Source of the DNA: Octopus sinensis
Lineage: Eukaryota
DNA length: 15,971 nt
Assembly: GCF_006345805.1 (NCBI RefSeq)
Contig: NW_021825307.1
Coordinates: 1-15,971 of the forward strand
Direction of reading: 5' to 3'
Shown here: positions 1 to 15,961 of the stretch, one piece after another
How the letters are laid out: each line of letters begins with the position of its first letter
Numbering within the stretch: the first letter of the stretch is position 1
Program-made: the position numbers and the translations under genes
Notes under the pieces: generated by a model
The model's input: the letters and a program-made list of their open reading frames with translations, nothing else
The model's database searches: none
What the model was told of the DNA's origin: nothing

Positions 1-195
1 ATATATATATATATATATTAATAAATAAACATATGCATATATACATACATATATCTGTACGTACCTACCTCTTCATGTATATATACACACATATATGAGT
101 ACAAGACACCAATATATATATATATGTGTGTATTTACACATATATACATTATATATTATGTAAACTTTATTTAAAGCAGCAGAAAATTCAACAAC

Positions 196-233
196 CTGTT
201 ACTCTGAGTTTCCCATTGCCGTTCATCGGACAG
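196..233 (-). ncRNA. Minimal type-I hammerhead ribozyme motif, degenerate (U4C, weak stem II)
   Basis: Minus strand: CUGU | CCGAUGA | ACG-GCAA-UGG | GAAA | CUC-A-GAG-U-A(cleavage) | ACAG. Stem I CUGU/ACAG, stem III ACUC/GAGU, GUA triplet. Confidence 0.65.
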
Positions 234-249
234 TTATTTCTAAGCAAAA

Positions 250-287
250 CTGTACGATGACCGGCAACGAGAAACTCATAGTAACAG
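250..287 (+). ncRNA. Minimal type-I hammerhead ribozyme motif, degenerate (C3A, U4C)
   Basis: Plus strand: CUGU | ACGAUGA | CCG-GCAA-CGA | GAAA | CUCAUAG-U-A(cleavage after 283) | ACAG. Inverted partner of 196-233. Confidence 0.6.
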
Positions 288-396
288 ATTTTGTTGAATT
301 TTCTGCTGCTTAAAATAAAGCATATTACTCTACCACTGGTATTTGAGTACTCTTTTTTCCACCTTGTTTCACATTTATGTGTTTTTTCTACTCCGG

Positions 397-1682: not shown

Positions 1683-1717
<35 letters not shown>

Positions 1718-1751
1718 TTCTCTTTCTACGTGTTTATCTATCCATCCATCC

Positions 1752-1816
<65 letters not shown>

Positions 1817-1854
1817 CCTACCTGTATATCTATCTATCTATCTACCTACCTGTA

Positions 1855-1910
<56 letters not shown>
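1683..1910 (+). repeat. (CT)n followed by (CATC)/(TATC)n microsatellite
   Basis: (CT)n 1683-1711; (TATC)n with variants 1735-1910. Confidence 0.97.
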
Positions 1911-2356
1911 ATCCTTGTGGCTATGGCGAAAGAATGTATCTGGTGGACGCGTCTGAAAGGATTGTAGACAAACACTTTCCTCTCTAGTCAATCTCTCATC
2001 AACTTCTTCAAGTACCACTTGAAAAGGAAAGTGAGAGTAGAGAGGCAAGTTTTGTTTAGCGAATGTTTTAAAAAAAGATGGGTGAATGTAGCAAGGATGG
2101 CACCTTGAGCATAATCCTATGAACCCAGAAATTGAAAACAGAGGGTTACCCACTCACAAACAAATGTGGTAACATATTACAAGGCTTTTCTTCCTTTTTT
2201 TTCCTTTTACGATCCCTTTTGATCGAAAACCTACGCCACCTTTTTTTTTGTTTCCTTTGTTTTTTGTTTTTTGTTTTTTTTCATCCCCCCAAAAGAAAAG
2301 CTCTACCTTGTAACTTGTCCCATCTGTGTGCAGCCCTGTGTGGCCAATAAAGAAAC
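1908..2356 (+). mobile_element. 5'-truncated Tx1/L1-type LINE copy 1 (end of ORF2 plus 3' UTR)
   Basis: 1908-2103 matches 6118-6313 at 191/196 nt without gaps, followed by a 19-nt deletion. The 3' UTR ends CAGCCCTGTGTGGCCAATAAAGAAAC on (TATC)n. Confidence 0.93.
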
Positions 2357-2378
2357 TTATCTATCTATCTATCTATCT

Positions 2379-2524
2379 GTTTTTCTCTCTCTTTTTACGA
2401 TTCCTTTTGATCGAAAACCTACCCCCTTTTTATTTTTATTTTATTTTTTTCTCCCCCCAAAAGAAAAGCTCTACTTTGTAATTTGTCCCCTCTGTGTTCA
2501 GCCCTGTGTGGCTAATAAAGAAAC
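2379..2524 (+). mobile_element. Severely 5'-truncated Tx1/L1-type LINE copy 2 (3' UTR only)
   Basis: Contains the TTTTACGAT...GATCGAAA hairpin, the AAAAGAAAAGCTCTAC block and the terminal CAGCCCTGTGTGGCTAATAAAGAAAC shared with 6600-6730. Confidence 0.9.
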
Positions 2525-2570
2525 TTATCCATCCATCCATCCATCCACCCACCCATCCATCCATCCATCC

Positions 2571-2609
<39 letters not shown>

Positions 2610-2659
2610 CATCCATCTATCTATCTATCTATCTATCTACCTATCTATCTATCTATCTA

Positions 2660-2747
<88 letters not shown>

Positions 2748-2761
2748 CATCTATCTATCTT

Positions 2762-2800
<39 letters not shown>
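2525..2800 (+). repeat. (CATC)n/(TATC)n microsatellite
   Basis: Read directly. Confidence 0.97.
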
Positions 2801-2801
<1 letters not shown>

Positions 2802-2881
2802 AATTTCTCACAAAGAAACTGTACTGGGATCTCCTCGAGGACAAACCAAAGGAGGAGAAAGCAAAAACTTTCGAGCAGTAA
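2801..2881 (+). pseudogene. Probable C-terminal remnant of LINE ORF1 ([26 protein letters not shown])
   Basis: Open frame starting at the TATC junction and stopping at 2879-2881, 44 nt before the ORF2 ATG. Supported by position only, with no recognisable motif. Confidence 0.4.
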
Positions 2882-2925
2882 GTAACCCTCTGTTCCTTTC
2901 ACTTGTATTCTAATTCATTAGGACT

Positions 2926-5900
2926 ATGATCAAGATTGGTTGTGTAAATGCGCTTGGCTTGGGGTCCCCTTGGAAACAAGGGTACCTCTTAAATGACATA
3001 AAGTCACATAAGTTAGAAATCTAATGCCATAAGTGAGACCAGACTCCACATCCGCGGGCCCTAAAGACCATGTTTGGCGGACAGTTCAACATTTATTTTT
3101 CCCCCTGTCTGCCGAGAATGGGCGGTAGTGCACCGCGGTACTTTTTCACAAGAGTCTGGATCTCAAAGTAAGACAATATTCGTAGACCCGGAGGGTAGAC
3201 TGGTCGTCCTGGATGTCGACGTCAGCAATGGGTGCGCTTTTCGACTCGTATCAGTCTACGCACCGCCCTTAACAGGTCGGGCGGATTTCTTTCAACGTCT
3301 AGAAGTATTCTTGGAAACGTCTCGTCCTTTACTCTTAGTGGGGGATTGGAATGCTACCTTGGACACGCATGTAGACTACGTGGGTAGAGATAGGAATAGA
3401 CGGGGATGCAAAGCCTCAGAGACCTGCTCAGACGCTTTCAACTGTCTGACAGGTTCCGACTAGACCACCCGAATGCGCCAACGTGGTCATGGAGCAACCG
3501 CATCGGGTCGTCGAGATCGTATCTAGATAGGATACTGTGTAGGACAGTAGACAGAGATAGCATAGGATGTCCACAATTCAATTCACATAGTCAGCTACAC
3601 GGATCACAAACTTGTGACATGTACGCTAGACTTAGGTAAGACACTTAGGCAGGGTCCCGGATACTGGAAACTAAACGCGTCTTTCCCATCGAGACAGGTT
3701 TTCAGAGACCGGATTAGCACACTAATAAAGAGGGCTTTGACGGAGCCATCATCAACAACAAATGGTGGTTTGCCCTCAAGAGAGCAGTAAAAGCAGAAGC
3801 GATTAGGTACAGCAAAGCACTAGCCATAGATAGAAATAGAGTAGAGGGTGAGCTAGTTAAGAAGCTAGAAGAGGCAATTAGAAGCGGCATCGCATCCGAC
3901 GTTTTGGCGGCGAGTTGGCCCTCGACCAACACTTCAACGCCAAACACGAAGGATGTGCTGTCAGAGCTAGGATGCGTGCTCTAAGGAACGAAGGTGTTGG
4001 AGCCGCGAGAGAGGCCCGGGGGCAGAGGCGCAACAGGGCAACAAAGCCACCATTCGGTCCCTGGTAGATGAACAGGGGCGCGAATTGCTCGAGCCAAGTA
4101 AAATGTGTGAGGCCTTTCAGCAGCATTTTGCCCGACTGTTCGGAACGAGTGGAGGGCAAGAACGTAGGGTGGACTTCAGTGCCTACCTACATAGCCTACC
4201 ACGACTCTCGACAAGAAAGGCAGGGTGCTGCGAAGGTGCCATCACGGCGGCGGAAGTGCAGGGAGCGATGGCAGAATGCTCGAGGGACAAATCACCGGGT
4301 TTGGATGGTCTACCCTACGAGCTTTACAATTGTATGCCAGACTTGTTTGGAGATCTCTTGGCGGCGGTGTACTGCAACTGGCAGCAAAACGGGAGCATTC
4401 TGGTTTTGTGAGCCGAGGAGCCGTAACACTGCTGAAGAAAGATCTAAACAAGGGAAATGTAATAGATAACTTTAGGCCCATCACTCTGCTTAATGCAGAC
4501 TTGAAAATTTTGGCCAAGGTGCTAGCCAAGAGGTTGGCGCTTGTCATCGAGAAACTGGTCGACAGGGCGCAAACATGCGCCGTGCCAGGCCGGACCATCC
4601 ATGACAACCTCGACCTGATGCGCTACATCATAGACAGGGTAGTTAACGAACCTGGCATGGGTGGGGCGCTGATCAATTTGGATCAATCGAAAGCTTTCGA
4701 TAGGGTGGACCATCGATACTTGGAGGCGGTCCTCGAGCGGCTGGCTTCGGTCCCGTCTTCCGCGGCTGGATAGCCGCTTTGTACAGAGGCATCCGTTCGG
4801 TAATTCGCGTGAATGGACATCTATCGAGACCCTTCGACATCGCACGTTCGGTCCGTCAGGGATGCCCCCTCTCGTCGCTTCTATACGTATTGACTCTCGA
4901 GCCATTATTGCGGAGGCTGGCAACCTTGAGAGGCATCCCGCGAGAACTGGGATGCGGGACGAGCGTGTCTGCATACGCGGACGACGTCACCGTCATAGTG
5001 TCTAGCCACGAGCACATCGAGCAGGTCGGCGAGACCTGAAAAACTACGAAGCAGTGACAGGAGCGAAAATCAACCGGGAAAGTCAGTGGGCTTGCGACTA
5101 GGCACCTGGAGAAGCAACCCATGCCGTCCACCAGCGCCTCCGTCGTGGGACGCTGGACCGACGGCCCGGTTGAGTTGCTCGGGGTCTGGTTTGGTCCGGA
5201 CCTCCAAGTGGAGAAGAACTGGAACGAAATAACGAGTAGGGTGGTCACTCTCGCCCGGCAATGGGCCGAGAGGAAACTGTCCCTAAAAGGTCGGGCGGAG
5301 GTGGCGAACACGTACACGCGTCCGTCATCTACTACCGCCTGACCGTCGTACCTTGTCCCGACCCTACCATCACCAAACTACAACGCATTCTCTTTCGCTT
5401 CTTGTGGAAAGGATGCGTCCCGATGGTCAGGCGATCCATTTGCTGTCAACACCCGTTAAAAGGAGGGCTGGGCATGCCGTGGTTAATGATGCGCAGACAC
5501 GCGCTGAGACTGCGACATCTCTGGCTCTATGTAGACGACGGCGAACAGGTGTGGTCGCCGTTTGTGAGGCACGCTTTTCCGCAGCTCGTCTCCATGACCG
5601 AACTGCAGTCGTGGATCAAAGAGTCCGAAGAAGGGAATGGCACCGCGAGTGTCGCGTTGCTCTCAAGCAACTCTGCCGTCCTGGGTCGACCTTGAGTGAC
5701 TTCAACACAACCAAAGCATTCTATAGGGGTTTAGTGGAGGGAAGGTACGACGACGAGCTCGGGGCGAACCTGGACGTCGACGAGGAGTACTTGACCCGCC
5801 TGTTCAGGACGACTTTCGGGCCAGGGCCCATGGACAACTTCCAGAGATCCCTGGCCTGGCAGTGCTACCGAGAAGCGCTACCCGTTCGGGATAAGCTCTA

Positions 5901-6351
5901 CAGACACGGCTCGAAAAACACGGGGCCGACCTGCCCGAGATGCGGTCAGAGCGACGAAACCGTTCTGCACGCACTCGTGCAGTGTCCAACAATTTCCGAC
6001 CTGTGGGCTTATGTCGAACAACTGCTGTCACGTGTGGGACGAGTCGGTTTATCAGCTGAGTCTATCGTTAATATTGTCACGCCTCCCTCCTTCAAACGGG
6101 AAGGAAGAGCTATTTTCATCATCCTTGTGGCTATGGCGAAAGAATGTATCTGGTGGACGCGTCTGAAAGGATTGGAGACAAACACTTTCCTCTCTGGTCA
6201 ATCTCTCATCAACTTCTTCAAGTACCACTTGAAAAGGAAAGTGAGAGTAGTGAGGCAAGTTTTGTCTAGCGAATGTTTTAAAAAAAGATGGGTGAATGTA
6301 GCAAGAATGGCACGTATGAATGACGAAGCCACCTTGAGCATGATCCTATGA
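2926..6351 (+). pseudogene. LINE ORF2 (APE endonuclease, reverse transcriptase, CCHC zinc finger), frameshifted in this sequence
   Basis: Stitched motifs: MIKIGCVNALGL (2926), ISETRL, SVYAP, LVGDWN, RSYLDRIL, YTDHKLV, GPGYWKLN, KSPGLDGLPYELY, NFRPITLLNADLKILAK, LDQSKAFDRVDH, VRQGCPLS, YADD (4974-4985), LLGVWF, CPRC-x8-H-x4-C, stop at 6349-6351. About 16 frameshifts. Confidence 0.93.
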
Positions 6352-6730
6352 ACCCAGAAATTGAAAACAGAGAGTTGCTTATTCGCAAGAAAAAAAAAAA
6401 AAAAGAAATATAACATGTGACTCCATTGACCGAGGTTACCGTGGTCTTTTCCGTAGGCTTTTCTTTCCACGGGCAAACCTCACCTGTCCTCCCCTTTACA
6501 CTTCATATTGACATTTCTGTGATAACGATCCCTATTGATCAATTTTTTTTTTTTTTTCCTCTCCCCCTTTTTTTTAACCCCCCCTTTTTTTGTCCTCTTT
6601 CCCTCCTTTTACGATCCCTTTTGATCGAAACTCCCCCTTCCTTTTTTTTTTTTTTTAAACCTTCAAAAGAAAAGCTCTACCTTGTAATTTGTTCTATCTG
6701 TGTGCAGCCCTGTGTGGCTAATAAAGAAAC

Positions 6731-6749
6731 ATATCTATCTATCTACCTA

Positions 6750-6787
<38 letters not shown>

Positions 6788-6795
6788 CCTATCTA

Positions 6796-6837
<42 letters not shown>

Positions 6838-7024
6838 ACAATCTATCTATCTATCTACCTATCTATATCTATCTATCTACCTATCTATCTATCTATCCGT
6901 CTATCTATCTAACTACCCATTCATCTATCTATCTATCTATCTATATCTATCTATCCATCTATCTATCTATCTATCTATCTAACTACCCATTCATCTATCT
7001 ATCTATCCATCTATCTAACTACCC

Positions 7025-7098
<74 letters not shown>

Positions 7099-7123
7099 CA
7101 TCTATCTATCCATCTATCTATCT
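6731..7123 (+). repeat. (TATC)n microsatellite with variant units
   Basis: Read directly; contains three copies of a TATCTAACTACCCATT variant block. Confidence 0.97.
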
Positions 7124-8465: not shown

Positions 8466-8650
8466 CACACACCACACACACAACATATATATATATATAC
8501 ACACACACATATATATATATATATATAATACACACACACACATATATATATATATATACACACACACATATATATATATATATACACACACACACACCAC
8601 ACACACACAACACACACACACACAACACACACAATATATATATATATATA
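8381..8650. repeat. Interleaved (TA)n/(CA)n microsatellite
   Basis: Read directly. Confidence 0.97.
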
Positions 8651-8832
8651 CAGTTAATCCAAACATGAAAACACAAAGGGAAAACACAACAACGCGAGGA
8701 CGTGGAACAAGCATAGTGTTATTATTGGACGCTCAGGAAAGGAAACAAAGAAGGAGGATTTAACGTTTCGAGCGGAGCTCTTCGTCAGAAACATAGGAAA
8801 AGGAAAGGTCCAAGGAAGGGAAGACGGAGAAA
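8651..8832 (-). mobile_element. Penelope-like terminal-repeat fragment carrying a hammerhead motif
   Basis: Contains the hammerhead at 8758-8792 and runs into (TA)n/(CA)n about 110 nt downstream on the minus strand. Boundaries approximate; family inferred. Confidence 0.55.
8758..8792 (-). ncRNA. Minimal type-I hammerhead ribozyme motif with intact core
   Basis: GUUU | CUGACGA-A | GAGC-UCC-GCUC | GAAA | CG-U-U(cleavage) | AAAU. Stem I 4 bp including a G-U pair, stem II 4 bp, loopless palindromic stem III ACGU. Confidence 0.7.
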
Positions 8833-8918
8833 TTGTAGACATAATTGTGTTTGGTCGTTTTTTAGCTAAGATACTAAGATATAAGAAAGCTGACATGGTT
8901 GCCATTATTAAAGAAGGA

Positions 8919-9077
8919 CAGGCTTCTTTCAGTTTCCGTCTACCGAATCCACTCACAAGGCTTTGGTCAGCCCGAGGCTATAGTAGAAGACACTTGCCCA
9001 AGGTGCCACGCAATGGGACTGAACTCGGAACCATGTGATTGGGAAGCAAGCTTCTTACCACGCAGCCACGCCTGCAC

Positions 9078-9080
<3 letters not shown>
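8919..9080 (-). mobile_element. tRNA-derived SINE head and core (CORE-like)
   Basis: Minus strand GGTGCAGGCGTGGCTGCGTGGTAAG (A box), GAGTTCAGTCC (B-box-like), CCTTGGGCAAGTG (CORE-like). Homologous to 10272-10433 and 10501-10667. Confidence 0.8.

Positions 9081-9120
<40 letters not shown>
9081..9120. repeat. (TA)n microsatellite
   Basis: Read directly. Confidence 0.97.
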
Positions 9121-9122
<2 letters not shown>

Positions 9123-9573
9123 TTTAAAAGCCTTGTCACTTGTCCGTGGAGTTCTCAGCCACGTACGTTAATTTCACGACCATTCTGATCCGTTGATCGA
9201 ATCAACTGGAACACTCATCGTCGTAAACGACGGAAGGCCATTTTTTTTTTTTTTTTGCCACCGTTGTTGTTGACGTCGTTCAGTTAGCCCCCGACGTTGC
9301 TCTGGCTGAACAGATACATGATCAAAAGGCTTTCCCAACATGACTCTCCTGCCCTTCTCTCGCGGGAAAGTAATCTACAACTACATTAAGTGATAACTAC
9401 ATTATTATCTCATTTGTTTTACTCTCTCCCCTTTTTTTTTTTTTTTTAATCCATTTTTAATCCATTTCCGATCGATGTTCCCATTTAAAGACATTGATTT
9501 AACAAAGTTGTTTTTAGCAAAGTGAACTTAATGGCGCAGATTTCTTTTTTTTAATGGATTCGGCCATTGAAAA

Positions 9574-9778
9574 CATCATCATCATCATCATCATCATCGT
9601 TTAACGTCCGTTCTCCATGCTAGCATGGGTTGGACAGTTCGACCGGGGATCTGGGAAGCCAGAAGGCTGCACCAGGCTCCAGTCTTATCTGGCAATGTTT
9701 CTACAGCTGGATGCCCTTCCTAACGCCAACCACTTCGTGAGTGTAGTGGGTGCTTTTTACGTGCCACCTGCACTGGCA
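9574..9778 (-). mobile_element. Retroposon 3' end with (GAT)n tail (SINE or RTE-related)
   Basis: (CAT)n 9574-9598 abutting a GC-richer block containing GGATGCCCTTCCTAACGCCAACC, a motif type recalled from invertebrate short retroposons. Family not determinable here. Confidence 0.55.
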
Positions 9779-10006
9779 ATTTTTAGAATATTTTGGAGCC
9801 AAATTGGAAACAATTCCAAGTGTTTGGAGATGTCTAATGTTCTACTCCGCCTCAGGAATTGGTCGTGGTGGTGGGAATATTTCTGGTAGTCACGGCACCA
9901 TGATAAATGAAACTGTGTAGTCATATCTTTATTCAGGATGAATCTCGAAGTGAATGCAGCTATATCCAATAGTTTGTAATACATTGACATACATCGTTGA
10001 TACAGA

Positions 10007-10238: not shown

Positions 10239-10275
<37 letters not shown>

Positions 10276-10433
10276 GTTTCCGTCAACCAAATCCACTCAC
10301 AAGGCTTTAGCTGGCCCGAGACTATAGTAGAAAACACTTGCCAAGGTGCCACACAATGGGACTGAACCTGGAACCATGTGATTGGCAAGCAAGTTTTTTT
10401 TTTTAATTTTATCACACAGCTACTCCTGCGCCT
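10007..10433 (-). mobile_element. Near full-length tRNA-derived SINE with internal (GT)n tract
   Basis: Head GGCGCAGGAGTAGCTGTGTG...AGGTTCAGTCCC at 10433-10272, homologous to 8919-9080. Internal (CA)n at about 10226-10271; 3' body ending in an A-rich tail near 10007-10025. 3' boundary approximate. Confidence 0.75.
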
Positions 10434-10500: not shown

Positions 10501-10667
10501 TGGGCGCAGGAGTGGCTGTGTGTTAAGTATCTTATTTACCAACCACATGATTCCGGGTTCAGTCCCACTGCGTAGCACCCCGGACAAGTGTTTTCTACTA
10601 TAGCCTCGGGCCGACCAAAGCCTTGTGAGTGGATTCGATATAAAAAAAACTGAAGGAGACCCGTCGT
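10501..10667 (+). mobile_element. tRNA-derived SINE head and core, same family as 8919-9080
   Basis: GGCGCAGGAGTGGCTGTGTG (A box), GGGTTCAGTCCC (B box), AAGCCTTGTGAGTGGATT; ends on (TA)n. Confidence 0.8.
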
Positions 10668-10696
10668 GTATATATATATATATATATATATATATT

Positions 10697-10822
10697 TAAT
10701 ATTATTAGAGACAAAACCACTATTTTGCAAAACAAACAAGGAAGACTTAATCAATACATAAAATTGATTAGTCTTTCCTTGTTTGTTTTGCAAAATAGTG
10801 GTTTTGTCTCTAATTAATATTA
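10697..10822. repeat. Long near-perfect inverted repeat (hairpin)
   Basis: 10704-10743 is the exact reverse complement of 10775-10814 (40 bp). Pairing continues imperfectly to a 7-nt loop (10756-10762) and outward to 10697/10822. Confidence 0.95.
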
Positions 10823-10945: not shown

Positions 10946-11095
10946 CACAACAAACACAATTGCAGCGTGGAAGGTGTTTATAAGCCATTTAAAAACATAA
11001 AAGACCGTTAGATTCACTTCAGCATTTAAATTTTATTTGTGAAAATATTTTCGTCGCTTTGAAACCACGACCTGTTCAGTAACAAAATTACGTGC
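10941..11095 (-). mobile_element. Penelope-like terminal-repeat fragment carrying a hammerhead motif
   Basis: Hammerhead fold at 11036-11086 followed immediately by AATAAA on the minus strand, then about 100 nt to (TA)n. Bounded by microsatellites on both sides. Family inferred. Confidence 0.5.
11036..11086 (-). ncRNA. Type-I hammerhead motif with core variant CUGAACA (C at position 8)
   Basis: UUUGUUA | CUGAACA-G | GUCG-(11 nt)-CGAC | GAAA | AUAU-U-U(cleavage) | UCACAAA. Stem I 6/7 pairs, stem II 4 bp, palindromic stem III AAUAUU. Confidence 0.6.
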
Positions 11096-11126
11096 TACAT
11101 ACATACATACATACATGCATGCATCA

Positions 11127-11157
<31 letters not shown>

Positions 11158-11281
11158 CATACATACATACATACATACATACATACATACATACATACAT
11201 ACATACATACATACATACATACGTACGTACGTACGTGCGTACGAACGTACATACATACATACGTGTGTGTGTGTGTGTGTG
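11096..11281. repeat. (TACA)n/(TACG)n/(GT)n microsatellite
   Basis: Read directly. Confidence 0.97.
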
Positions 11282-11588
11282 AGTGTAAATATAATATGTA
11301 ACAATTATTCGGTATACATGATAAAACTCCGGGTTTCGGATGTTTACATAATATCGAGGTCTCTTCCATTCTTTTGTTGTCTTACCATTTCTATCAATAT
11401 ATAATATATATATGCATTACGGCCATAATACACTAATATCTGGACATCCTTGTTACTTATTTGCTTTTTATTCACGTAATTTCGAGCTGTGCGGACAATA
11501 CCGGACTGACTCGGTGATTCAACTTCGAGCTGTATATACGAGGATCCCGTGCATAACAGAACGCAATAAAATGCATAATATATATATA

Positions 11589-11817
11589 TTTCTTTACTAC
11601 CCACAAGGGGCTAAACACAGAGGGGACAAACAAGGACAGACAAACGGATTAAGTCGATTATATCGACCCCAATGCGCAACTGGTACTTAATTTATCGACC
11701 CCGAGAGGATGAAAGGCTAAGTCGACCTCGGCGGAATTTGAACCCAGGACGTAGCGGCAGACGAAATACGGCTACGCATTTCGCCCGGCGTGCTAACGAT
11801 TCTACCAGCTCGCCGCC
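11589..11817 (-). mobile_element. Full-length tRNA-derived SINE with a Tx1-LINE-like 3' end
   Basis: Head GGCGGCGAGCTGGTAGAATCG (A box), GGGTTCAAATTCC (B box), central GCCTTTCATCC..GGGGTCGATAAA..AGTACC block. Terminal 42 nt are 37/42 identical to the LINE 3' end at 2482-2523. Both flanks are TA-rich. Confidence 0.88.
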
Positions 11818-11950
11818 ATATATAATTTAATTATTACATATATAATTTAATTATTACATATATATTACATATATAATATACGTGTTATACAAAAGCACTC
11901 TGTTTAATACGATACTCAAAATAGATGGAAAATTCGTAATTCTATTCTTT

Positions 11951-12917: not shown

Positions 12918-13104
12918 TTTAATAACATAGGAACAAAGTTAGACATGAATAGAAGGAGAGGAAAAAACTGAAATATATCGACCCTAGTGCATGACCCCTG
13001 TTTTGTTTTATTTACCAGGAGGTAACGTTGTCGTTGGTGTAGCGAGACTTGATCTTAGGATGTAACGAGATGCCTCCAAAGTATTTTTATTCGGTGCAAT
13101 AATT

Positions 13105-13603
13105 GTGACAAACCACTGTTCTCAATCTAAGTTCCAAATAAGTAAGAGTAGCGAATCGCCCTTTTATAGGATGTGTGGCAACAGAAACGAAACAGTCTCA
13201 CATGTTGTGAGTGAATGTAGCAAGCTGGCCCAAAAGCACTACACAAGGAAGCACGGTAATGTGGCTAAGTTCGTCCACTGGAGACCATGTGGGAAAGTAC
13301 GGCCTTAACAGAGTACAGAAATGGTACGAGCATGAACCGGAAGGGGTCACCGAGAACAAGGAACATAAGACACTGTGGGATTTTACAATCCAATGTGACT
13401 CCCTCATCGAGGCTCGGAGACCGGATATTGTTGTGGTAGATAAAAAGAAAAAAGGAAACGAAGATTATAGATATTGCAATACCTGGAGATGCACGCATAA
13501 GTGACAAAGAAGTAGAAAAGATTGGAAAGTGGAGACTATTATAAGACGAAATTGCCTCCCAGTAGTTGTAGGGGCACTCGGAGCACTAACAGCTAAGTTC
13601 GAG
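13105..13603 (+). mobile_element. R4/Dong-type RLE non-LTR retrotransposon fragment A (degraded CCHC plus PD-(D/E)xK endonuclease), 3' end missing
   Basis: Stitched peptide SESPFYRMCG...ETVSHVVSECSKLAQ...HGNVAKFVHW...KWYEHEPEGV...LWDFTIQCD...RRPDIVVVDK...IIDIAIPGD...PVVVGALG; several frameshifts and a stop. Confidence 0.85.
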
Positions 13604-14628: not shown

Positions 14629-15708
14629 GGTTCCAAATTTTTGTATAAAGCCGGTCATTTTAGAGTGGGTGGTACTTTATTTTGTGGACCCCAGAGAATT
14701 ATCTTAAATATCCATGTGTCTGGAATATTTAGCCATTTAGAAGTCGATTCTACAAGTAGGTATGCAGTGGGTTGAACAATGGATGACACATCACAGAGGA
14801 TATCGGTGTATTGCAGAATTTACCATTATGCAAATGGTTTCCTGAAGTATTTCGATTGCTAGGAGAGTGAAATTTTCTTTTTTTTTTTTTACTCCAACAA
14901 CAGAAAAAAATGTTCATATTACGAATCAAATTATTATTTTTCCCTTAAAAATGTGCAAGCGAAAATGAGGAAGCGAGAGACTGAAGAAGAAAAAATAATA
15001 AATTATGCAAATAAAAGTAATAAAAATGCAAATTTTTCATATAACTCCCATGAACATTGCGAATGTGTTTCATCGAAATTTTATTTATTTTTTTAAATTC
15101 GTTTCTCGGTTTATTACCATAAAAATACAATATTTTATAATTTTCTTTTTTTTGAAAAAAACATACCCAGAAATTTGCAAATACAGATTAAAATCACAAA
15201 ATATAAAGAGAAAAAGAAAAATGAATTTTCCAAACTACGAAGAAATATTGTGCCCCCAGTTAAATAAAAATTGTGTTACTATTTGCACCGATAGTAGCAT
15301 TACAGAAGCAAGAGGGTTTGCTTCTTTTACCCCAAAGTCTTAAATTTATTTTTGGTAATTAAAGATTTATTAACATTGAAATTTATGACTGGGCCATAGT
15401 CAGATATTGTCAAAGCTTTAAAATAAATGCATTTTGAATGGGAATATCAACACAATAAGCTGTTATAGGAAGATGATATTTAGAAAATTTAGTAATGCTG
15501 GTGAGAAGTTAGGAAAAAATGTAAGGTGGTGTCAATAAATATAAACAAAGAGAAGATATTGTATTACCTTACGTAGGTTCTTTAATGCTTCTATGATATT
15601 TCGGGAAACATCCTCCTAATCAAATATTAGAAAATAATCCATTAGTTCGGAGAAAAGCTTTGTTACAAGAAGGATATATACATGCAAAGACGCATTGATA
15701 CGTATTCC

Positions 15709-15712
15709 CACA

Positions 15713-15777
<65 letters not shown>
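15709..15777. repeat. (CA)n-(TA)n microsatellite
   Basis: Read directly. Confidence 0.95.
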
Positions 15778-15778
<1 letters not shown>

Positions 15779-15802
15779 AATATGTGTTCCAAGTACATAT
15801 AC

Positions 15803-15961
15803 ACTTCCGTTTTGTGATTCATTTACACAATAGAATAAAGCAATGCGGTCCGTGATTCACCTGCATAACGATTGATACAGCAGAGGAGGTTAATACTATA
15901 TAGATTGGCTGAGAACACGCCACATGTAATCGCCACTGAGTCAGCGGCAGTCCATGGCAAC
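15803..15961. promoter_or_regulatory. Candidate promoter or enhancer motif cluster
   Basis: ETS-like ACTTCCG 15803-15809, reverse CCAAT box GATTGGCT 15903-15910, AP-1 TGAGTCA 15937-15943, RFX X-box-like GTCCATGGCAAC 15950-15961, in a locally GC- and CpG-richer stretch. Confidence 0.4.

What the first reader, a model, noticed from the sequence alone, without database searches (positions are those of the whole stretch)
11589..11630. A tRNA-SINE shares its 3' end with the Tx1-type LINE: a SINE-LINE partner pair in one window
Seen: SINE terminus (minus strand) TTTGTCCCCTCTGTGTTTAGCCCCTTGTGGGTAGTAAAGAAA versus LINE terminus (2482-2523) TTTGTCCCCTCTGTGTTCAGCCCTGTGTGGCTAATAAAGAAA is 37/42 identical without gaps. 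Both stop at the same position and run into a TAT-starting microsatellite ((TA)n for the SINE, (TATC)n for the LINE). Established: SINEs borrow the 3' ends of the LINEs that mobilise them. This is common for CR1, L2 and RTE partners and uncommon for L1-clade elements. Inference: this SINE family is mobilised by the Tx1-type family, implying stringent 3' recognition and possibly inherited microsatellite targeting. This is the strongest candidate for an undescribed system here.
Basis: partly seen in the sequence, partly recalled or inferred. Interest (0 to 1): 0.83.

Follow-up and report, generated by a model that had tools for sequence, protein, structure and literature searches.

The report
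Octopus SINE carrying a Tx1-LINE tail
A short parasitic repeat (SINE) in this octopus DNA ends with about 60 bases copied from the end of a Tx1-type LINE that also lies in the window, which is the usual way a SINE borrows a LINE's copying machinery but is rarely documented for this LINE group.

Summary
The last 42 nt of the minus-strand SINE (11589-11630) match three LINE 3' termini in the window without gaps: 37/42 at 2482-2523, and 33/42 at 2314-2355 and 6688-6729. The next best match is 23 and the null maximum is 27.

With gaps the homology runs about 50-64 nt. It starts where SINE subfamilies in a 76-kb Octopus bimaculoides locus begin to differ (SINE nt ~166).

The LINE has an APE endonuclease, RT and C-terminal CCHC. 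Its RT scores higher against fish proteins named after Xenopus Tx1 ORF2 (206-224 bits) than against human L1 ORF2p (120 bits). Three 5'-truncated copies lie in one (TATC)n array, all in one orientation.

SINE and LINE tails are also shared in Argonauta. A CTTGT-loop hairpin motif recurs in more distant Tx1-like LINE 3'UTRs, one from cuttlefish, and in a second octopus SINE tail type.

Three points are not supported:
- tRNA detectors do not recognise the head.
- The SINE shows no microsatellite targeting.
- The window's LINE family is a relative of the mobiliser, probably not the mobiliser itself.

This is a classical stringent-type SINE/LINE pair in an unusual clade, not a new kind of system.

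The parts
11589..11817 (-). Complete SINE copy, 229 nt, running from GGCGGCGAGCTGG... to ...GTAGTAAAGAAA
   Evidence: Read directly. A full-length homologue on ENA scaffold L086 is 85% identical over 1-229. About 18 copies sharing nt 1-166 occur in 76 kb of O. bimaculoides.
11721..11817 (-). SINE head (nt 1-97): a tRNA-like region with a box-B-like GGTTCAAATTCC and a degenerate box A
   Evidence: Motifs read from the sequence. ARAGORN default and Rfam are negative. ARAGORN at -ps70 gives a cloverleaf-like call over the head. The tRNA origin is therefore plausible but not shown.
11652..11720 (-). SINE central domain (nt ~98-166), ...GCCTTTCATCCTCTCGGGGTCGATAAATTAAGTACCAGTTGCGCATTGGGGTCGATATAATCGAC
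   Evidence: Conserved in O. bimaculoides SINEs of all tail types, and in Argonauta SINEs that carry a different head.
11589..11651 (-). LINE-derived 3' module of the SINE (nt ~167-229)
   Evidence: O. bimaculoides SINE copies stop aligning at nt 166 unless they carry this tail. The module aligns to LINE 3'UTR ends over 42-64 columns.
11599..11611 (-). Predicted hairpin GCCC-CTTGT-GGGT in the SINE tail
   Evidence: Present in the minimum-free-energy fold. Pairing is kept across 21 tails with two pairs changed on both sides.
11579..11588 (-). (TA)5 directly 3' of the SINE: either its own A/T-rich terminal repeat or the flank
   Evidence: The other two copies of this tail type continue GAAA+TAAATAAT.. 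and GAAA+TAAATATAT... A short A/T repeat is therefore probably part of the element.
2801..6730 (+). Tx1-like LINE copy 3, 5'-truncated at the end of ORF1. ORF2 has at least 8 frame breaks.
   Evidence: Stop-to-stop frames, Pfam, and tblastn of P0124 and P0001 along 3176-6342.
3176..3912 (+). Apurinic/apyrimidinic-type (APE) endonuclease region of ORF2 (decayed)
   Evidence: Pfam Exo_endo_phos at 3215-3373, E = 0.005, below the curated cut-off. tblastn to aa 84-330 of the full-length relative P0124. A related element (L090) has a full Exo_endo_phos ORF just upstream of its RT ORF, and the YTX2-named fish proteins carry PF03372.
4334..5375 (+). Reverse transcriptase region
   Evidence: Pfam RVT_1, E = 4e-12 and 1e-10. 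68% identity to the Argonauta protein P0001.
5848..6006 (+). C-terminal CCHC zinc-binding domain (zf-RVT). The ORF2 stop is at 6349-6351.
   Evidence: Pfam PF13966, E = 2.7e-8.
6352..6729 (+). LINE 3'UTR. The last ~50 nt are homologous to the SINE tail, the hairpin AGCC-CTGTGT-GGCT lies at 6706-6719, and AATAAA follows just downstream at 6720-6725.
1911..2356 (+). LINE copy 1: 5'-truncated, covering the end of ORF2 plus a shorter 3'UTR variant. ATC microhomology at the 5' junction.
   Evidence: 97% identical to 6118-6313 (D10). The 3'UTR differs from copy 3 by internal deletions. The terminus is at 2355.
2381..2524 (+).
1683..1910 (+). (TC)n followed by a (TATC)n array upstream of LINE copy 1
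   Evidence: Tandem Repeats Finder and sequence.
2525..2800 (+). (ATCC)n/(ATCT)n array between LINE copies 2 and 3
6731..7123 (+). (TATC)n array, about 100 units, 3' of LINE copy 3

Best explanation
The element at 11589-11817 (minus strand) is a 229-nt composite SINE from an octopod genome. It has three modules: a pol-III-type, tRNA-like head; a conserved central domain; and a ~63-nt 3' module copied from the 3'UTR end of an octopod Tx1-like (L1-group) LINE.

Three decayed, 5'-truncated copies of one such LINE family lie at 1911-6730. All sit in a single (TATC)n array in the same orientation.

Proposed mechanism (inferred, not shown). The ORF2 protein of a Tx1-like LINE recognises the shared 3' module, which is a small hairpin with a CUUGU loop followed by A(A/G)UAAAGAAA. 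It does this on its own RNA and, in trans, on SINE RNA. It nicks A/T-rich DNA, since target duplications begin with (A)TAT. It then primes reverse transcription using short homology between the nicked DNA and the element's terminal simple repeat. That repeat is TCTA/TATC units in these LINEs and TA/TAAA in this SINE.

The LINE family in the window is a close relative of the mobiliser rather than demonstrably the mobiliser.
For: 1. Tail homology is far beyond chance. The ungapped scores are 37/42, 33/42 and 33/42 against a null maximum of 27. Gapped local alignments give z = 8.6-20.6.

2. The module boundary is seen independently. O. bimaculoides SINE copies share nt 1-166 and then diverge into three tail types. 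Only the copy with this tail aligns through to nt 229.

3. The relation is replicated in Argonauta hians. SINE copies there end ...TCGGCCCTTGTGGCTAATAGAGAAATCTAT and LINE 3' ends read ...TCGGCCCTTGTGGCTAATAAAGAAATCTAT. The homology runs about 60 nt.

4. LINE clade. The element has an APE endonuclease, RT and zf-RVT CCHC. The window RT scores 206-224 bits against fish proteins annotated 'YTX2' (the Swiss-Prot name of Xenopus Tx1 ORF2), 120 bits against human L1 ORF2p and 55 bits against R2. For Argonauta P0001 the figures are 215-245 against 150. A YTX2-named protein scores 192 bits against the L1 RT.

5. Hairpin. On the MAFFT alignment of 21 tails, 92.8% of cells pair, against 80.5% in shuffles (0/500) and 10-51% when the partners are slid. 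Two of the four pairs show changes on both sides (G-C to C-G and C-G to G-C) (hand count).

6. Motif distribution. [AG]G[GC]CC?TTGTG[GC]C[CTA] occurs 15 times in 470 kb of held sequence. Thirteen instances are readable SINE tails or Tx1-like LINE 3' ends. One lies in a LINE 3'UTR ~400 nt further downstream (L090 5807, not examined) and one is a LINE-tail-like sequence (L001 13909). It is absent from about 80 loci of more distant LINEs.

7. Junctions. TSDs recovered for SINE copies start with (A)TAT: TATAAGGCCTA, TATTTCAAGGAA and TATTATCTTT...
Against: - Only three copies of this SINE tail type were recovered (window, L085, L086).
- No LINE with exactly the SINE's tail (GCCC-CTTGT-GGGT) was found.
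- The window's full-length LINE copy matches only 33/42.
- The hairpin is only 4 bp, and folding energies do not differ from shuffles (z = +0.1 to -2.2).
- The tail sequences are related copies, and I chose the structure from them, so the covariation counts are inflated.
- The Tx1 assignment rests on similarity ranking against proteins whose names were transferred by annotation. It is not a phylogeny with curated references.
- 3' ends of other octopus LINE clades (RTE, CR1, Dong-R4) were not available for comparison.
- No experiment bears on mobilisation.
Confidence: 0.75

Rival explanations
1. The SINE is mobilised by a LINE of another clade, such as RTE, CR1 or Dong-R4, which are all abundant in octopus. 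On this view the similarity to the Tx1-like 3' end reflects a shared captured module or recombination, not partnership.
For: Octopus genomes hold active RTE, CR1 and Dong-R4 families (PMC13282606 Table 1; PMC9115989). I could not compare their 3' ends. SINE tails are swapped readily, with three tail types on one head and core.
Against: Every instance of the motif that could be examined in 470 kb lies in a SINE tail or in the 3'UTR of a Tx1-like LINE. In Argonauta the SINE and Tx1-like LINE tails agree at 28 of the last 30 nt, terminal TCTAT included. A second SINE tail type (A) matches the 3'UTR motif of further Tx1-like LINEs.
Confidence: 0.12
2. The apparent composite is an accident of this locus. 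On this view a SINE lacking this tail happens to abut a 5'-truncated LINE 3' fragment.
For: 5'-truncated LINE tails as short as 60-140 nt do exist (window 2381-2524; Argonauta L001 14236 and 5126).
Against: The same junction...GTCGAT.TAATCGACTTAATCC|GTTTG..., with the same head, core and tail is seen in L086 and, more diverged at the junction itself (...ATCAATGTAACCTATTTAATCCCTTTG...), in O. bimaculoides L085. Each copy has different flanks.
Confidence: 0.02
3. The (TATC)n arrays are not a pre-existing target. They are the LINE's own 3' terminal repeat, expanded, and copies 1 and 2 arose by local duplication within the array rather than by separate insertions.
For: Argonauta SINE and LINE copies all end GAAATCTAT, which is one unit of the same TCTA/TATC repeat and so part of the element. 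A relative ends in (ATT)n. Copy 1 is 97% identical to copy 3 in the coding part.
Against: An array also lies upstream of copy 1, next to unique DNA, with no LINE upstream of it. The three copies have different 5' truncation points and different 3'UTR indel variants. A TATC array without any LINE exists at 445-614. The two readings can both hold: a terminal repeat that also guides re-insertion into such repeats.
Confidence: 0.35

Closest known systems
Stringent-type LINE/SINE pairs, e.g. eel UnaL2/UnaSINE1 (L2 clade; Kajikawa & Okada 2002; PMC1636434)
   Same: The SINE carries the last tens of nt of the LINE 3'UTR. There is a small conserved hairpin in the shared tail and short terminal repeats after it. 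The inferred mode is trans-recognition by the LINE RT.
   Different: The LINE clade differs (Tx1-like versus L2). The hairpin here is only 4 bp with a CUUGU loop and has no experimental or thermodynamic support.
L1-clade stringent pairs: maize/sorghum SINEs with LINE1-1_ZM, and Chlamydomonas SINEX-3_CR with L1-1_CR (PMC3472496)
   Same: A SINE shares a specific 3' end with an L1-group LINE, which argues against purely poly(A)-based ('relaxed') recognition.
   Different: Those are plant and algal L1 lineages that end in poly(A). This one is an animal Tx1-like lineage ending in TCTA/TATC-type repeats with no poly(A).
SINEU and Tx1-Mar in crocodilians (PMC4494074)
   Same: A SINE proposed to be mobilised by Tx1-clade LINEs.
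   Different: That pairing rests on shared target preference and shared snRNA-derived 5' heads. SINEU elements have poly(A) tails, and for SINEU-1 no LINE in Repbase matched its 3' half. Here the evidence is a shared 3' tail, and target sharing is weak.
Microsatellite-specific Tx1 families Kibi (TC)n and Koshi (TTC)n, and crocodilian (TTCC)n/(TTTC)n families (Kojima & Fujiwara 2004, as cited in PMC4494074)
   Same: A Tx1-group LINE found inside one microsatellite type in a fixed orientation.
   Different: The repeat unit is TATC. A (TATC)n-associated family was not mentioned in the papers I could read. The evidence here is three copies at one locus.
Octopus SINEs (OK, OR1, OR2 of Ohshima & Okada 1994; 'tRNA-Deu' and 'tRNA-Core' in RepeatMasker-based surveys, PMC8967140 and PMC13282606)
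   Same: The same host group, and the same abundant tRNA-class SINEs (11.6% of the O. vulgaris genome).
   Different: I could not obtain those consensus sequences, so identity with a named family is untested. The papers I read name no partner LINE.
Bivalve SINEs with highly conserved central domains that use multiple LINE partners (PMC11481361)
   Same: One head and core combined with several alternative LINE-derived tails.
   Different: The word Tx1 does not occur in that paper's text. Here all three tail types carry a CTTGTG core, and types A and B match Tx1-like LINE 3' ends.

Membership tests
SINE (composite: small-RNA head, body, LINE-derived tail) | Head derived from tRNA with an internal pol III promoter (boxes A and B) | tested here: inconclusive
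   ARAGORN default and Rfam find no tRNA in the window copy or in L001, L085 or L086 SINEs. ARAGORN at 70% threshold calls a cloverleaf over the head. GGTTCAAATTCC resembles box B with one extra base.
SINE (composite: small-RNA head, body, LINE-derived tail) | Short, non-coding, dispersed in many copies with different flanks | tested here: met
   The element is 229 nt. About 18 copies sharing nt 1-166 lie in 76 kb of O. bimaculoides, and a full copy lies on L086.
SINE (composite: small-RNA head, body, LINE-derived tail) | Target-site duplications | tested here: inconclusive
   The window copy lies in TA-rich DNA, and only TATATAT can be matched on both sides. The O. bimaculoides copy of the same type has TSD TATAAGGCCTA, and Argonauta copies have 12-15-bp TSDs.
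Stringent-type SINE/LINE partnership | 3' end sequence shared between the SINE and a LINE of the same genome | tested here: met
   37/42, 33/42 and 33/42 without gaps, and 50-64 columns with gaps. Also seen in Argonauta.
Stringent-type SINE/LINE partnership | Conserved stem-loop in the shared tail | tested here: inconclusive
   92.8% of cells pair and two pairs change on both sides; 0/500 shuffles reach the observed values. The stem is only 4 bp, energies are not significant, and the sequences are related.
Stringent-type SINE/LINE partnership | Trans-mobilisation of the SINE by the LINE proteins | not testable with these tools
   This needs a retrotransposition assay.
Stringent-type SINE/LINE partnership | Overlapping periods of activity of the SINE and the LINE | not tested
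   This needs genome-wide copy sets, and only three SINE copies of this tail type were available.
Tx1 clade of non-LTR retrotransposons (L1 group) | ORF2 with an N-terminal APE endonuclease, an RT and a C-terminal CCHC motif | tested here: met
   Pfam Exo_endo_phos (weak, E = 0.005), RVT_1 and zf-RVT. The element is collinear by tblastn with the 1145-aa relative P0124.
Tx1 clade of non-LTR retrotransposons (L1 group) | RT closer to Tx1 than to L1 proper | tested here: met
   206-224 bits against 'YTX2'-named proteins and 120 bits against human L1 ORF2p, with the same program and the same region. Caveat: the names were transferred by annotation, and only one L1 reference was used.
Tx1 clade of non-LTR retrotransposons (L1 group) | Placement in an RT phylogeny with curated clade references (RTclass1/Repbase) | not testable with these tools
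   No curated Tx1, L1, RTE or CR1 reference set was available.
Tx1 clade of non-LTR retrotransposons (L1 group) | Target-specific insertion | tested here: met
   Three copies with different 5' ends lie in the same orientation, each bounded by TATC-type arrays. This is one locus only.
Microsatellite-targeting SINE | SINE copies embedded in the partner's target microsatellite | tested here: not met
   None of the three type-B copies lies in a TATC array. Their flanks are TA-rich or unique DNA.

The most novel reading that the evidence does not exclude
Cephalopod Tx1-like LINEs may share a conserved 3' recognition module: a 4-bp hairpin with a CUUGU loop followed by an A-rich end and a short simple repeat. 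The octopod SINE superfamily may have captured this module at least twice, possibly three times (tail types A and B, perhaps C). If so, Tx1-type LINEs would be the main engine of the octopus-specific SINE expansion (about 11% of the genome), rather than the RTE element highlighted in octopus brain. They would also be a stringent-recognition lineage inside the L1 group of animals.
Probability: 0.4. Interest if true: 0.6.

Novelty: new member of a known kind. Interest (0 to 1): 0.45.

Why it matters
SINEs are the most conspicuous octopus-specific genome expansion. They are enriched in brain transcripts and lncRNAs, yet none of the papers I could search names the LINE that drives them. A shared 3' module points to Tx1-like LINEs.

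This would add an animal example of specific (stringent) 3'-end recognition within the L1 group. So far the group is known for poly(A)-based recognition, with exceptions in plants and algae. It also gives a short, mutable RNA element that can be tested directly in a retrotransposition assay.

Tried and rejected
1. tRNA detection on the SINE head with ARAGORN and Rfam, on the window and on L001, L085 and L086, gave nothing at normal thresholds.

2. Exact-pattern scans for the SINE core in public collections gave nothing useful. JGI metagenome contigs gave 0 hits and viral contigs gave 0. GTDB genomes gave 2 hits, both chance matches inside bacterial genes.

3. The search for related loci with the LINE protein in metagenome contigs returned 80 loci, but only distant relatives (at most 49% identity). 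None carries the tail motif.

4. Naming by cluster look-up of 10 representatives gave no informative names. Naming came instead from a profile search that surfaced 'YTX2' proteins.

5. Two fetch attempts failed to yield a 3' end. P0104, a LINE fragment filed under a Herbaspirillum MAG, is not on record. L004 ends at the ORF.

6. SINEBase supplementary consensus sequences and Albertin et al. 2015 are not held, so I could not compare with OK, OR1, OR2 or Repbase entries.

7. Thermodynamic support for the hairpin is not significant.

8. The Rfam microRNA-like hits in the window are microsatellite or palindrome artefacts far below gathering scores.

9. The chance-similarity and accidental-juxtaposition readings were rejected.

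Full report
**Origin of the window.** The window is octopod genomic DNA. A stitched translation of the reverse-transcriptase region at 4400-5600 finds its best relative in Argonauta hians (68% identity). Two fragments on short contigs are 76-78% identical. The SINE has a full-length 85%-identical copy on a short ENA scaffold (L086). About 18 related copies lie in a 76-kb Octopus bimaculoides locus (L085).

**The observation.** I compared the 42-mer at the 3' end of the minus-strand element (reverse complement of 11589-11630) with every position of the window on both strands, without gaps.
- It scores 33/42 at 2314-2355 and 33/42 at 6688-6729.
- Nothing else exceeds 23, and 200 random windows of the same first-order composition never exceed 27.

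There are therefore three LINE 3' termini, not one, and all four sequences stop at the same ...AAAGAAA. With gaps, the homology reaches about 50 nt against the window's LINE copies. It reaches 64 alignment columns against an Argonauta LINE 3'UTR fragment.

**Anatomy of the LINE.**
- *Copy 3 (2801-6730).* It begins at the last 26 codons of ORF1 and is therefore 5'-truncated. ORF2 shows a decayed APE endonuclease (3176-3912), RT (4334-5375) and a C-terminal CCHC zf-RVT domain (5848-6006). The stop is at 6349-6351 and a 378-nt 3'UTR follows. There are at least eight frame breaks.
- *Copy 1 (1911-2356).* It covers the end of ORF2 plus a shorter 3'UTR variant.
- *Copy 2 (2381-2524).* It is a 3'UTR fragment only.
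- *Setting.* All three copies are in the same orientation. Each is bounded by TATC-type arrays at 1735-1910, 2357-2380, 2525-2800 and 6731-7123.

**Clade of the LINE.** Among solved structures the best match is human L1 ORF2p: 120 bits for the window RT and 150 bits for Argonauta P0001. R2 proteins score 55-83 bits. A profile of about 1300-aa relatives, taken from an exhaustive search, surfaced proteins from Polyodon and Polypterus named 'YTX2 protein'. That is the Swiss-Prot mnemonic of Xenopus Tx1 ORF2. With the same program, the window RT scores 206-224 bits against these and P0001 scores 215-245 bits. A YTX2-named protein scores 192 bits against the L1 RT. The octopod element is thus nearer to Tx1-like proteins than either is to human L1.

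Surveys of octopus repeats list L1-Tx1 as the only L1-group superfamily (PMC13282606 Table 1; PMC8967140). 'Tx1-type' is supported, with two caveats. The names were transferred by annotation. No phylogeny with curated references could be made.

**Anatomy of the SINE.** The 229-nt element has three modules.
- *Head (nt 1-97).* It carries a box-B-like GGTTCAAATTCC. No tRNA detector accepts it at normal thresholds. ARAGORN calls a cloverleaf only at 70% of its threshold.
- *Central domain (nt ~98-166).* It is conserved in all O. bimaculoides copies. It is also conserved in Argonauta SINEs that carry a different head.
- *Tail (nt ~167-229).* Most O. bimaculoides copies align only to nt 1-166 and then carry other tails. 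Only one copy (L085 40897-40607) and the L086 copy carry the window's tail. The LINE homology begins at this same boundary. This independently marks the tail as a swappable, LINE-derived module.

**Replication in other genomes.**
- *Argonauta (L001).* Five SINE copies end ...GGCCCTTGTGGCTAATAGAGAAATCTAT or a near variant. Several 5'-truncated copies of Tx1-like LINEs there end in close variants, and the best-matching one reads ...GGCCCTTGTGGCTAATAAAGAAATCTAT. The homology runs about 60 nt.
- *More distant Tx1-like LINEs (47-52% RT identity).* One is from the cuttlefish Acanthosepion pharaonis and two are on ENA contigs of unknown source. They carry ...CCCCTCCCCC(A)TTTTTCGGCCTTGTGCCA... or a weaker variant near the end of their 3'UTR.
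- *Majority O. bimaculoides tail (type A).* The motif just described matches this tail...CCCCCTCCCCAAAATTTCGGGCCTTGTGCC..., at 25/29.
- *Distribution of the core motif.* A regular expression for it hits 15 times in 470 kb of held DNA. Thirteen hits are readable SINE tails or Tx1-like LINE 3' ends. One further hit lies downstream within the L090 locus and one is a LINE-tail-like sequence in L001; I did not examine either. There are no hits in about 80 loci of more distant LINEs.

**A possible recognition hairpin.** The conserved core can form a 4-bp stem with a CTTGT loop.
- On the MAFFT alignment of 21 tails, 92.8% of cells pair. This compares with 80.5% in column shuffles (0/500 reach the observed value) and 10-51% when the partners are slid.
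- Two of the four pairs change on both sides: G-C to C-G in this SINE's tail type, and C-G to G-C in type A (hand-aligned count 88/92).
- Against it: the stem is short, folding energies do not differ from shuffles, and the window's LINE pairs in a register shifted by one base. The sequences are also related copies from which I chose the structure.

I treat the hairpin as a reasonable hypothesis, not a finding.

**Microsatellites and targets.**
- *The terminal repeat.* Argonauta SINE and LINE copies all end GAAATCTAT before their differing flanks. One TCTA/TATC unit therefore belongs to the element. A relative on L002 ends in (ATT)n. The terminal simple repeat is thus a family trait, as in other stringent LINEs.
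- *Arrays as targets.* In the window the arrays lie on both sides of the LINE copies. One lies upstream of copy 1 next to unique DNA. This indicates insertion into such arrays, in a fixed orientation, three times.
- *The SINE.* It does not share this behaviour. The three copies with this tail lie in TA-rich or unique DNA, and one has the TSD TATAAGGCCTA. In two of the three copies the sequence after GAAA is TAAATA... The (TA)5 after the window copy is therefore probably the SINE's own short tail.
- *What is shared.* TSDs tend to begin with (A)TAT. This would suit priming by short homology with a UAU-containing RNA end.

**Comparison with what is known.**
- Shared 3' tails between SINEs and LINEs are the classical signature of partnership. 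By 2012 a survey listed 58 such SINEs, including L1-clade cases in maize/sorghum and Chlamydomonas (PMC3472496, PMC3747384).
- For the Tx1 clade, the documented case is SINEU with Tx1-Mar in crocodilians. That case rests on shared target preference and shared 5' heads. SINEU elements have poly(A) tails, and for SINEU-1 no LINE in Repbase matched its 3' half (PMC4494074).
- Microsatellite-specific Tx1 families are known for (TC)n, (TTC)n, (TTCC)n and (TTTC)n (same paper).
- Octopus repeat papers report SINE abundance and L1-Tx1 families but name no partner (PMC13282606, PMC8967140, PMC9115989).
- I could not consult Repbase, Dfam or SINEBase sequences, so a prior record cannot be excluded.

**Verdict.** This is a real and statistically solid SINE/LINE tail homology in an octopod genome. 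It is best read as an ordinary stringent-type partnership whose LINE side is Tx1-like.
- It is new mainly as a member of a known kind.
- The particular LINE family in the window is probably a sister of the true mobiliser.
- The tRNA origin and the microsatellite-targeting inheritance are not supported by the tests I could run.
- The more interesting lead came from the related loci. The major octopus SINE tail types A and B trace to Tx1-like 3' modules, and type C shares only the CTTGTG core.

Noticed in passing
window 8905-9078 (-), 10274-10432 (-), 10503-10668 (+): Three copies of a second SINE family with a CORE-like motif (...GGCACCTTGGGCAAGTGTCTTCTACTATAGCC...GGTAGACGGAAACTGAAAGAAGCC). They end next to (TA)n or (TG)n runs. 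Two copies form a head-to-head inverted pair about 70 nt apart. A third forms a 138-nt, 86% inverted repeat with 10503-10640 across 1.4 kb. These could form double-stranded RNA if transcribed.
   Followed up: partly
window 174-312: A 139-nt near-perfect palindrome (DNA fold -53 kcal/mol, z = -14 against shuffles). It may be a foldback or MITE-like element, or a hairpin of unknown nature.
   Followed up: partly
L085 (O. bimaculoides CM046612.1 3410827-3487124), e.g. 65992-66207, 12920-13127, 40607-40897, 75298-75620: One SINE head and core carries three alternative tails (A: ...TTTCGGGCCTTGTGCCTAGAGTAGAAAAGAAT; B: as in the window; C: ...CTTGTGCCRAAACTTGAAAC). SINE copies are often inserted exactly at the 3' end of an earlier SINE tail.
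   Followed up: partly
L001 (Argonauta hians BAAFZT010000001.1), SINE copies with 3' ends at 1477, 2804, 3137, 13621, 15058, 15308: Argonauta SINEs share the central domain and LINE-type tail with the Octopus SINE but have a different head with a more canonical box B (GTGTTCGAATCCCAT). This implies module shuffling at the 5' side too.
   Followed up: no
L001 7102-12292: A Tx1-like element with open ORF1 and ORF2 reading frames in Argonauta. ORF1 is at least 482 aa and has a CCHC knuckle. The annotated 670-aa protein P0001 covers only RT and the C-terminus. One stop codon lies in the stretch 8597-10000 as I translated it, so ORF2 is not shown to be intact over the endonuclease part.
   Followed up: partly
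L089 5560-5640 (Acanthosepion pharaonis); L090 5380-5470; L003 12700-12780: The CGGCCTTGTGCC motif, preceded by a C-rich stretch, lies 25-60 nt before the AATAAA of more distant Tx1-like LINEs, one of them from a cuttlefish. L003 has only a weaker variant (GGGCCTTGTGACC). The module may therefore predate the octopod-decapodiform split.
   Followed up: partly
window 11092-11282, 10703-10815, 71-161, 15662-15827: Rfam microRNA and snoRNA matches at E < 1 all fall on (TACA)n/(TACG)n/(TG)n/(TA)n arrays or palindromes, far below gathering scores. They are low-complexity artefacts.
   Followed up: yes
window 11817-11864: A 20-nt unit (CATATATAATTTAATTATTA) repeated 2.4 times abuts the 5' end of the SINE. 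This makes the SINE's target-site duplication unreadable.
   Followed up: no
protein P0104: A 466-aa zf-RVT protein filed under 'MAG: Herbaspirillum sp.' is 64% identical to this cephalopod LINE ORF2. It is likely host DNA contaminating a metagenome-assembled genome.
   Followed up: no
L085 72445-72518 (-): ARAGORN calls a tRNA-Ser(gga) here, but Rfam at gathering threshold does not. It may be the head of yet another SINE, or a false positive.
   Followed up: no
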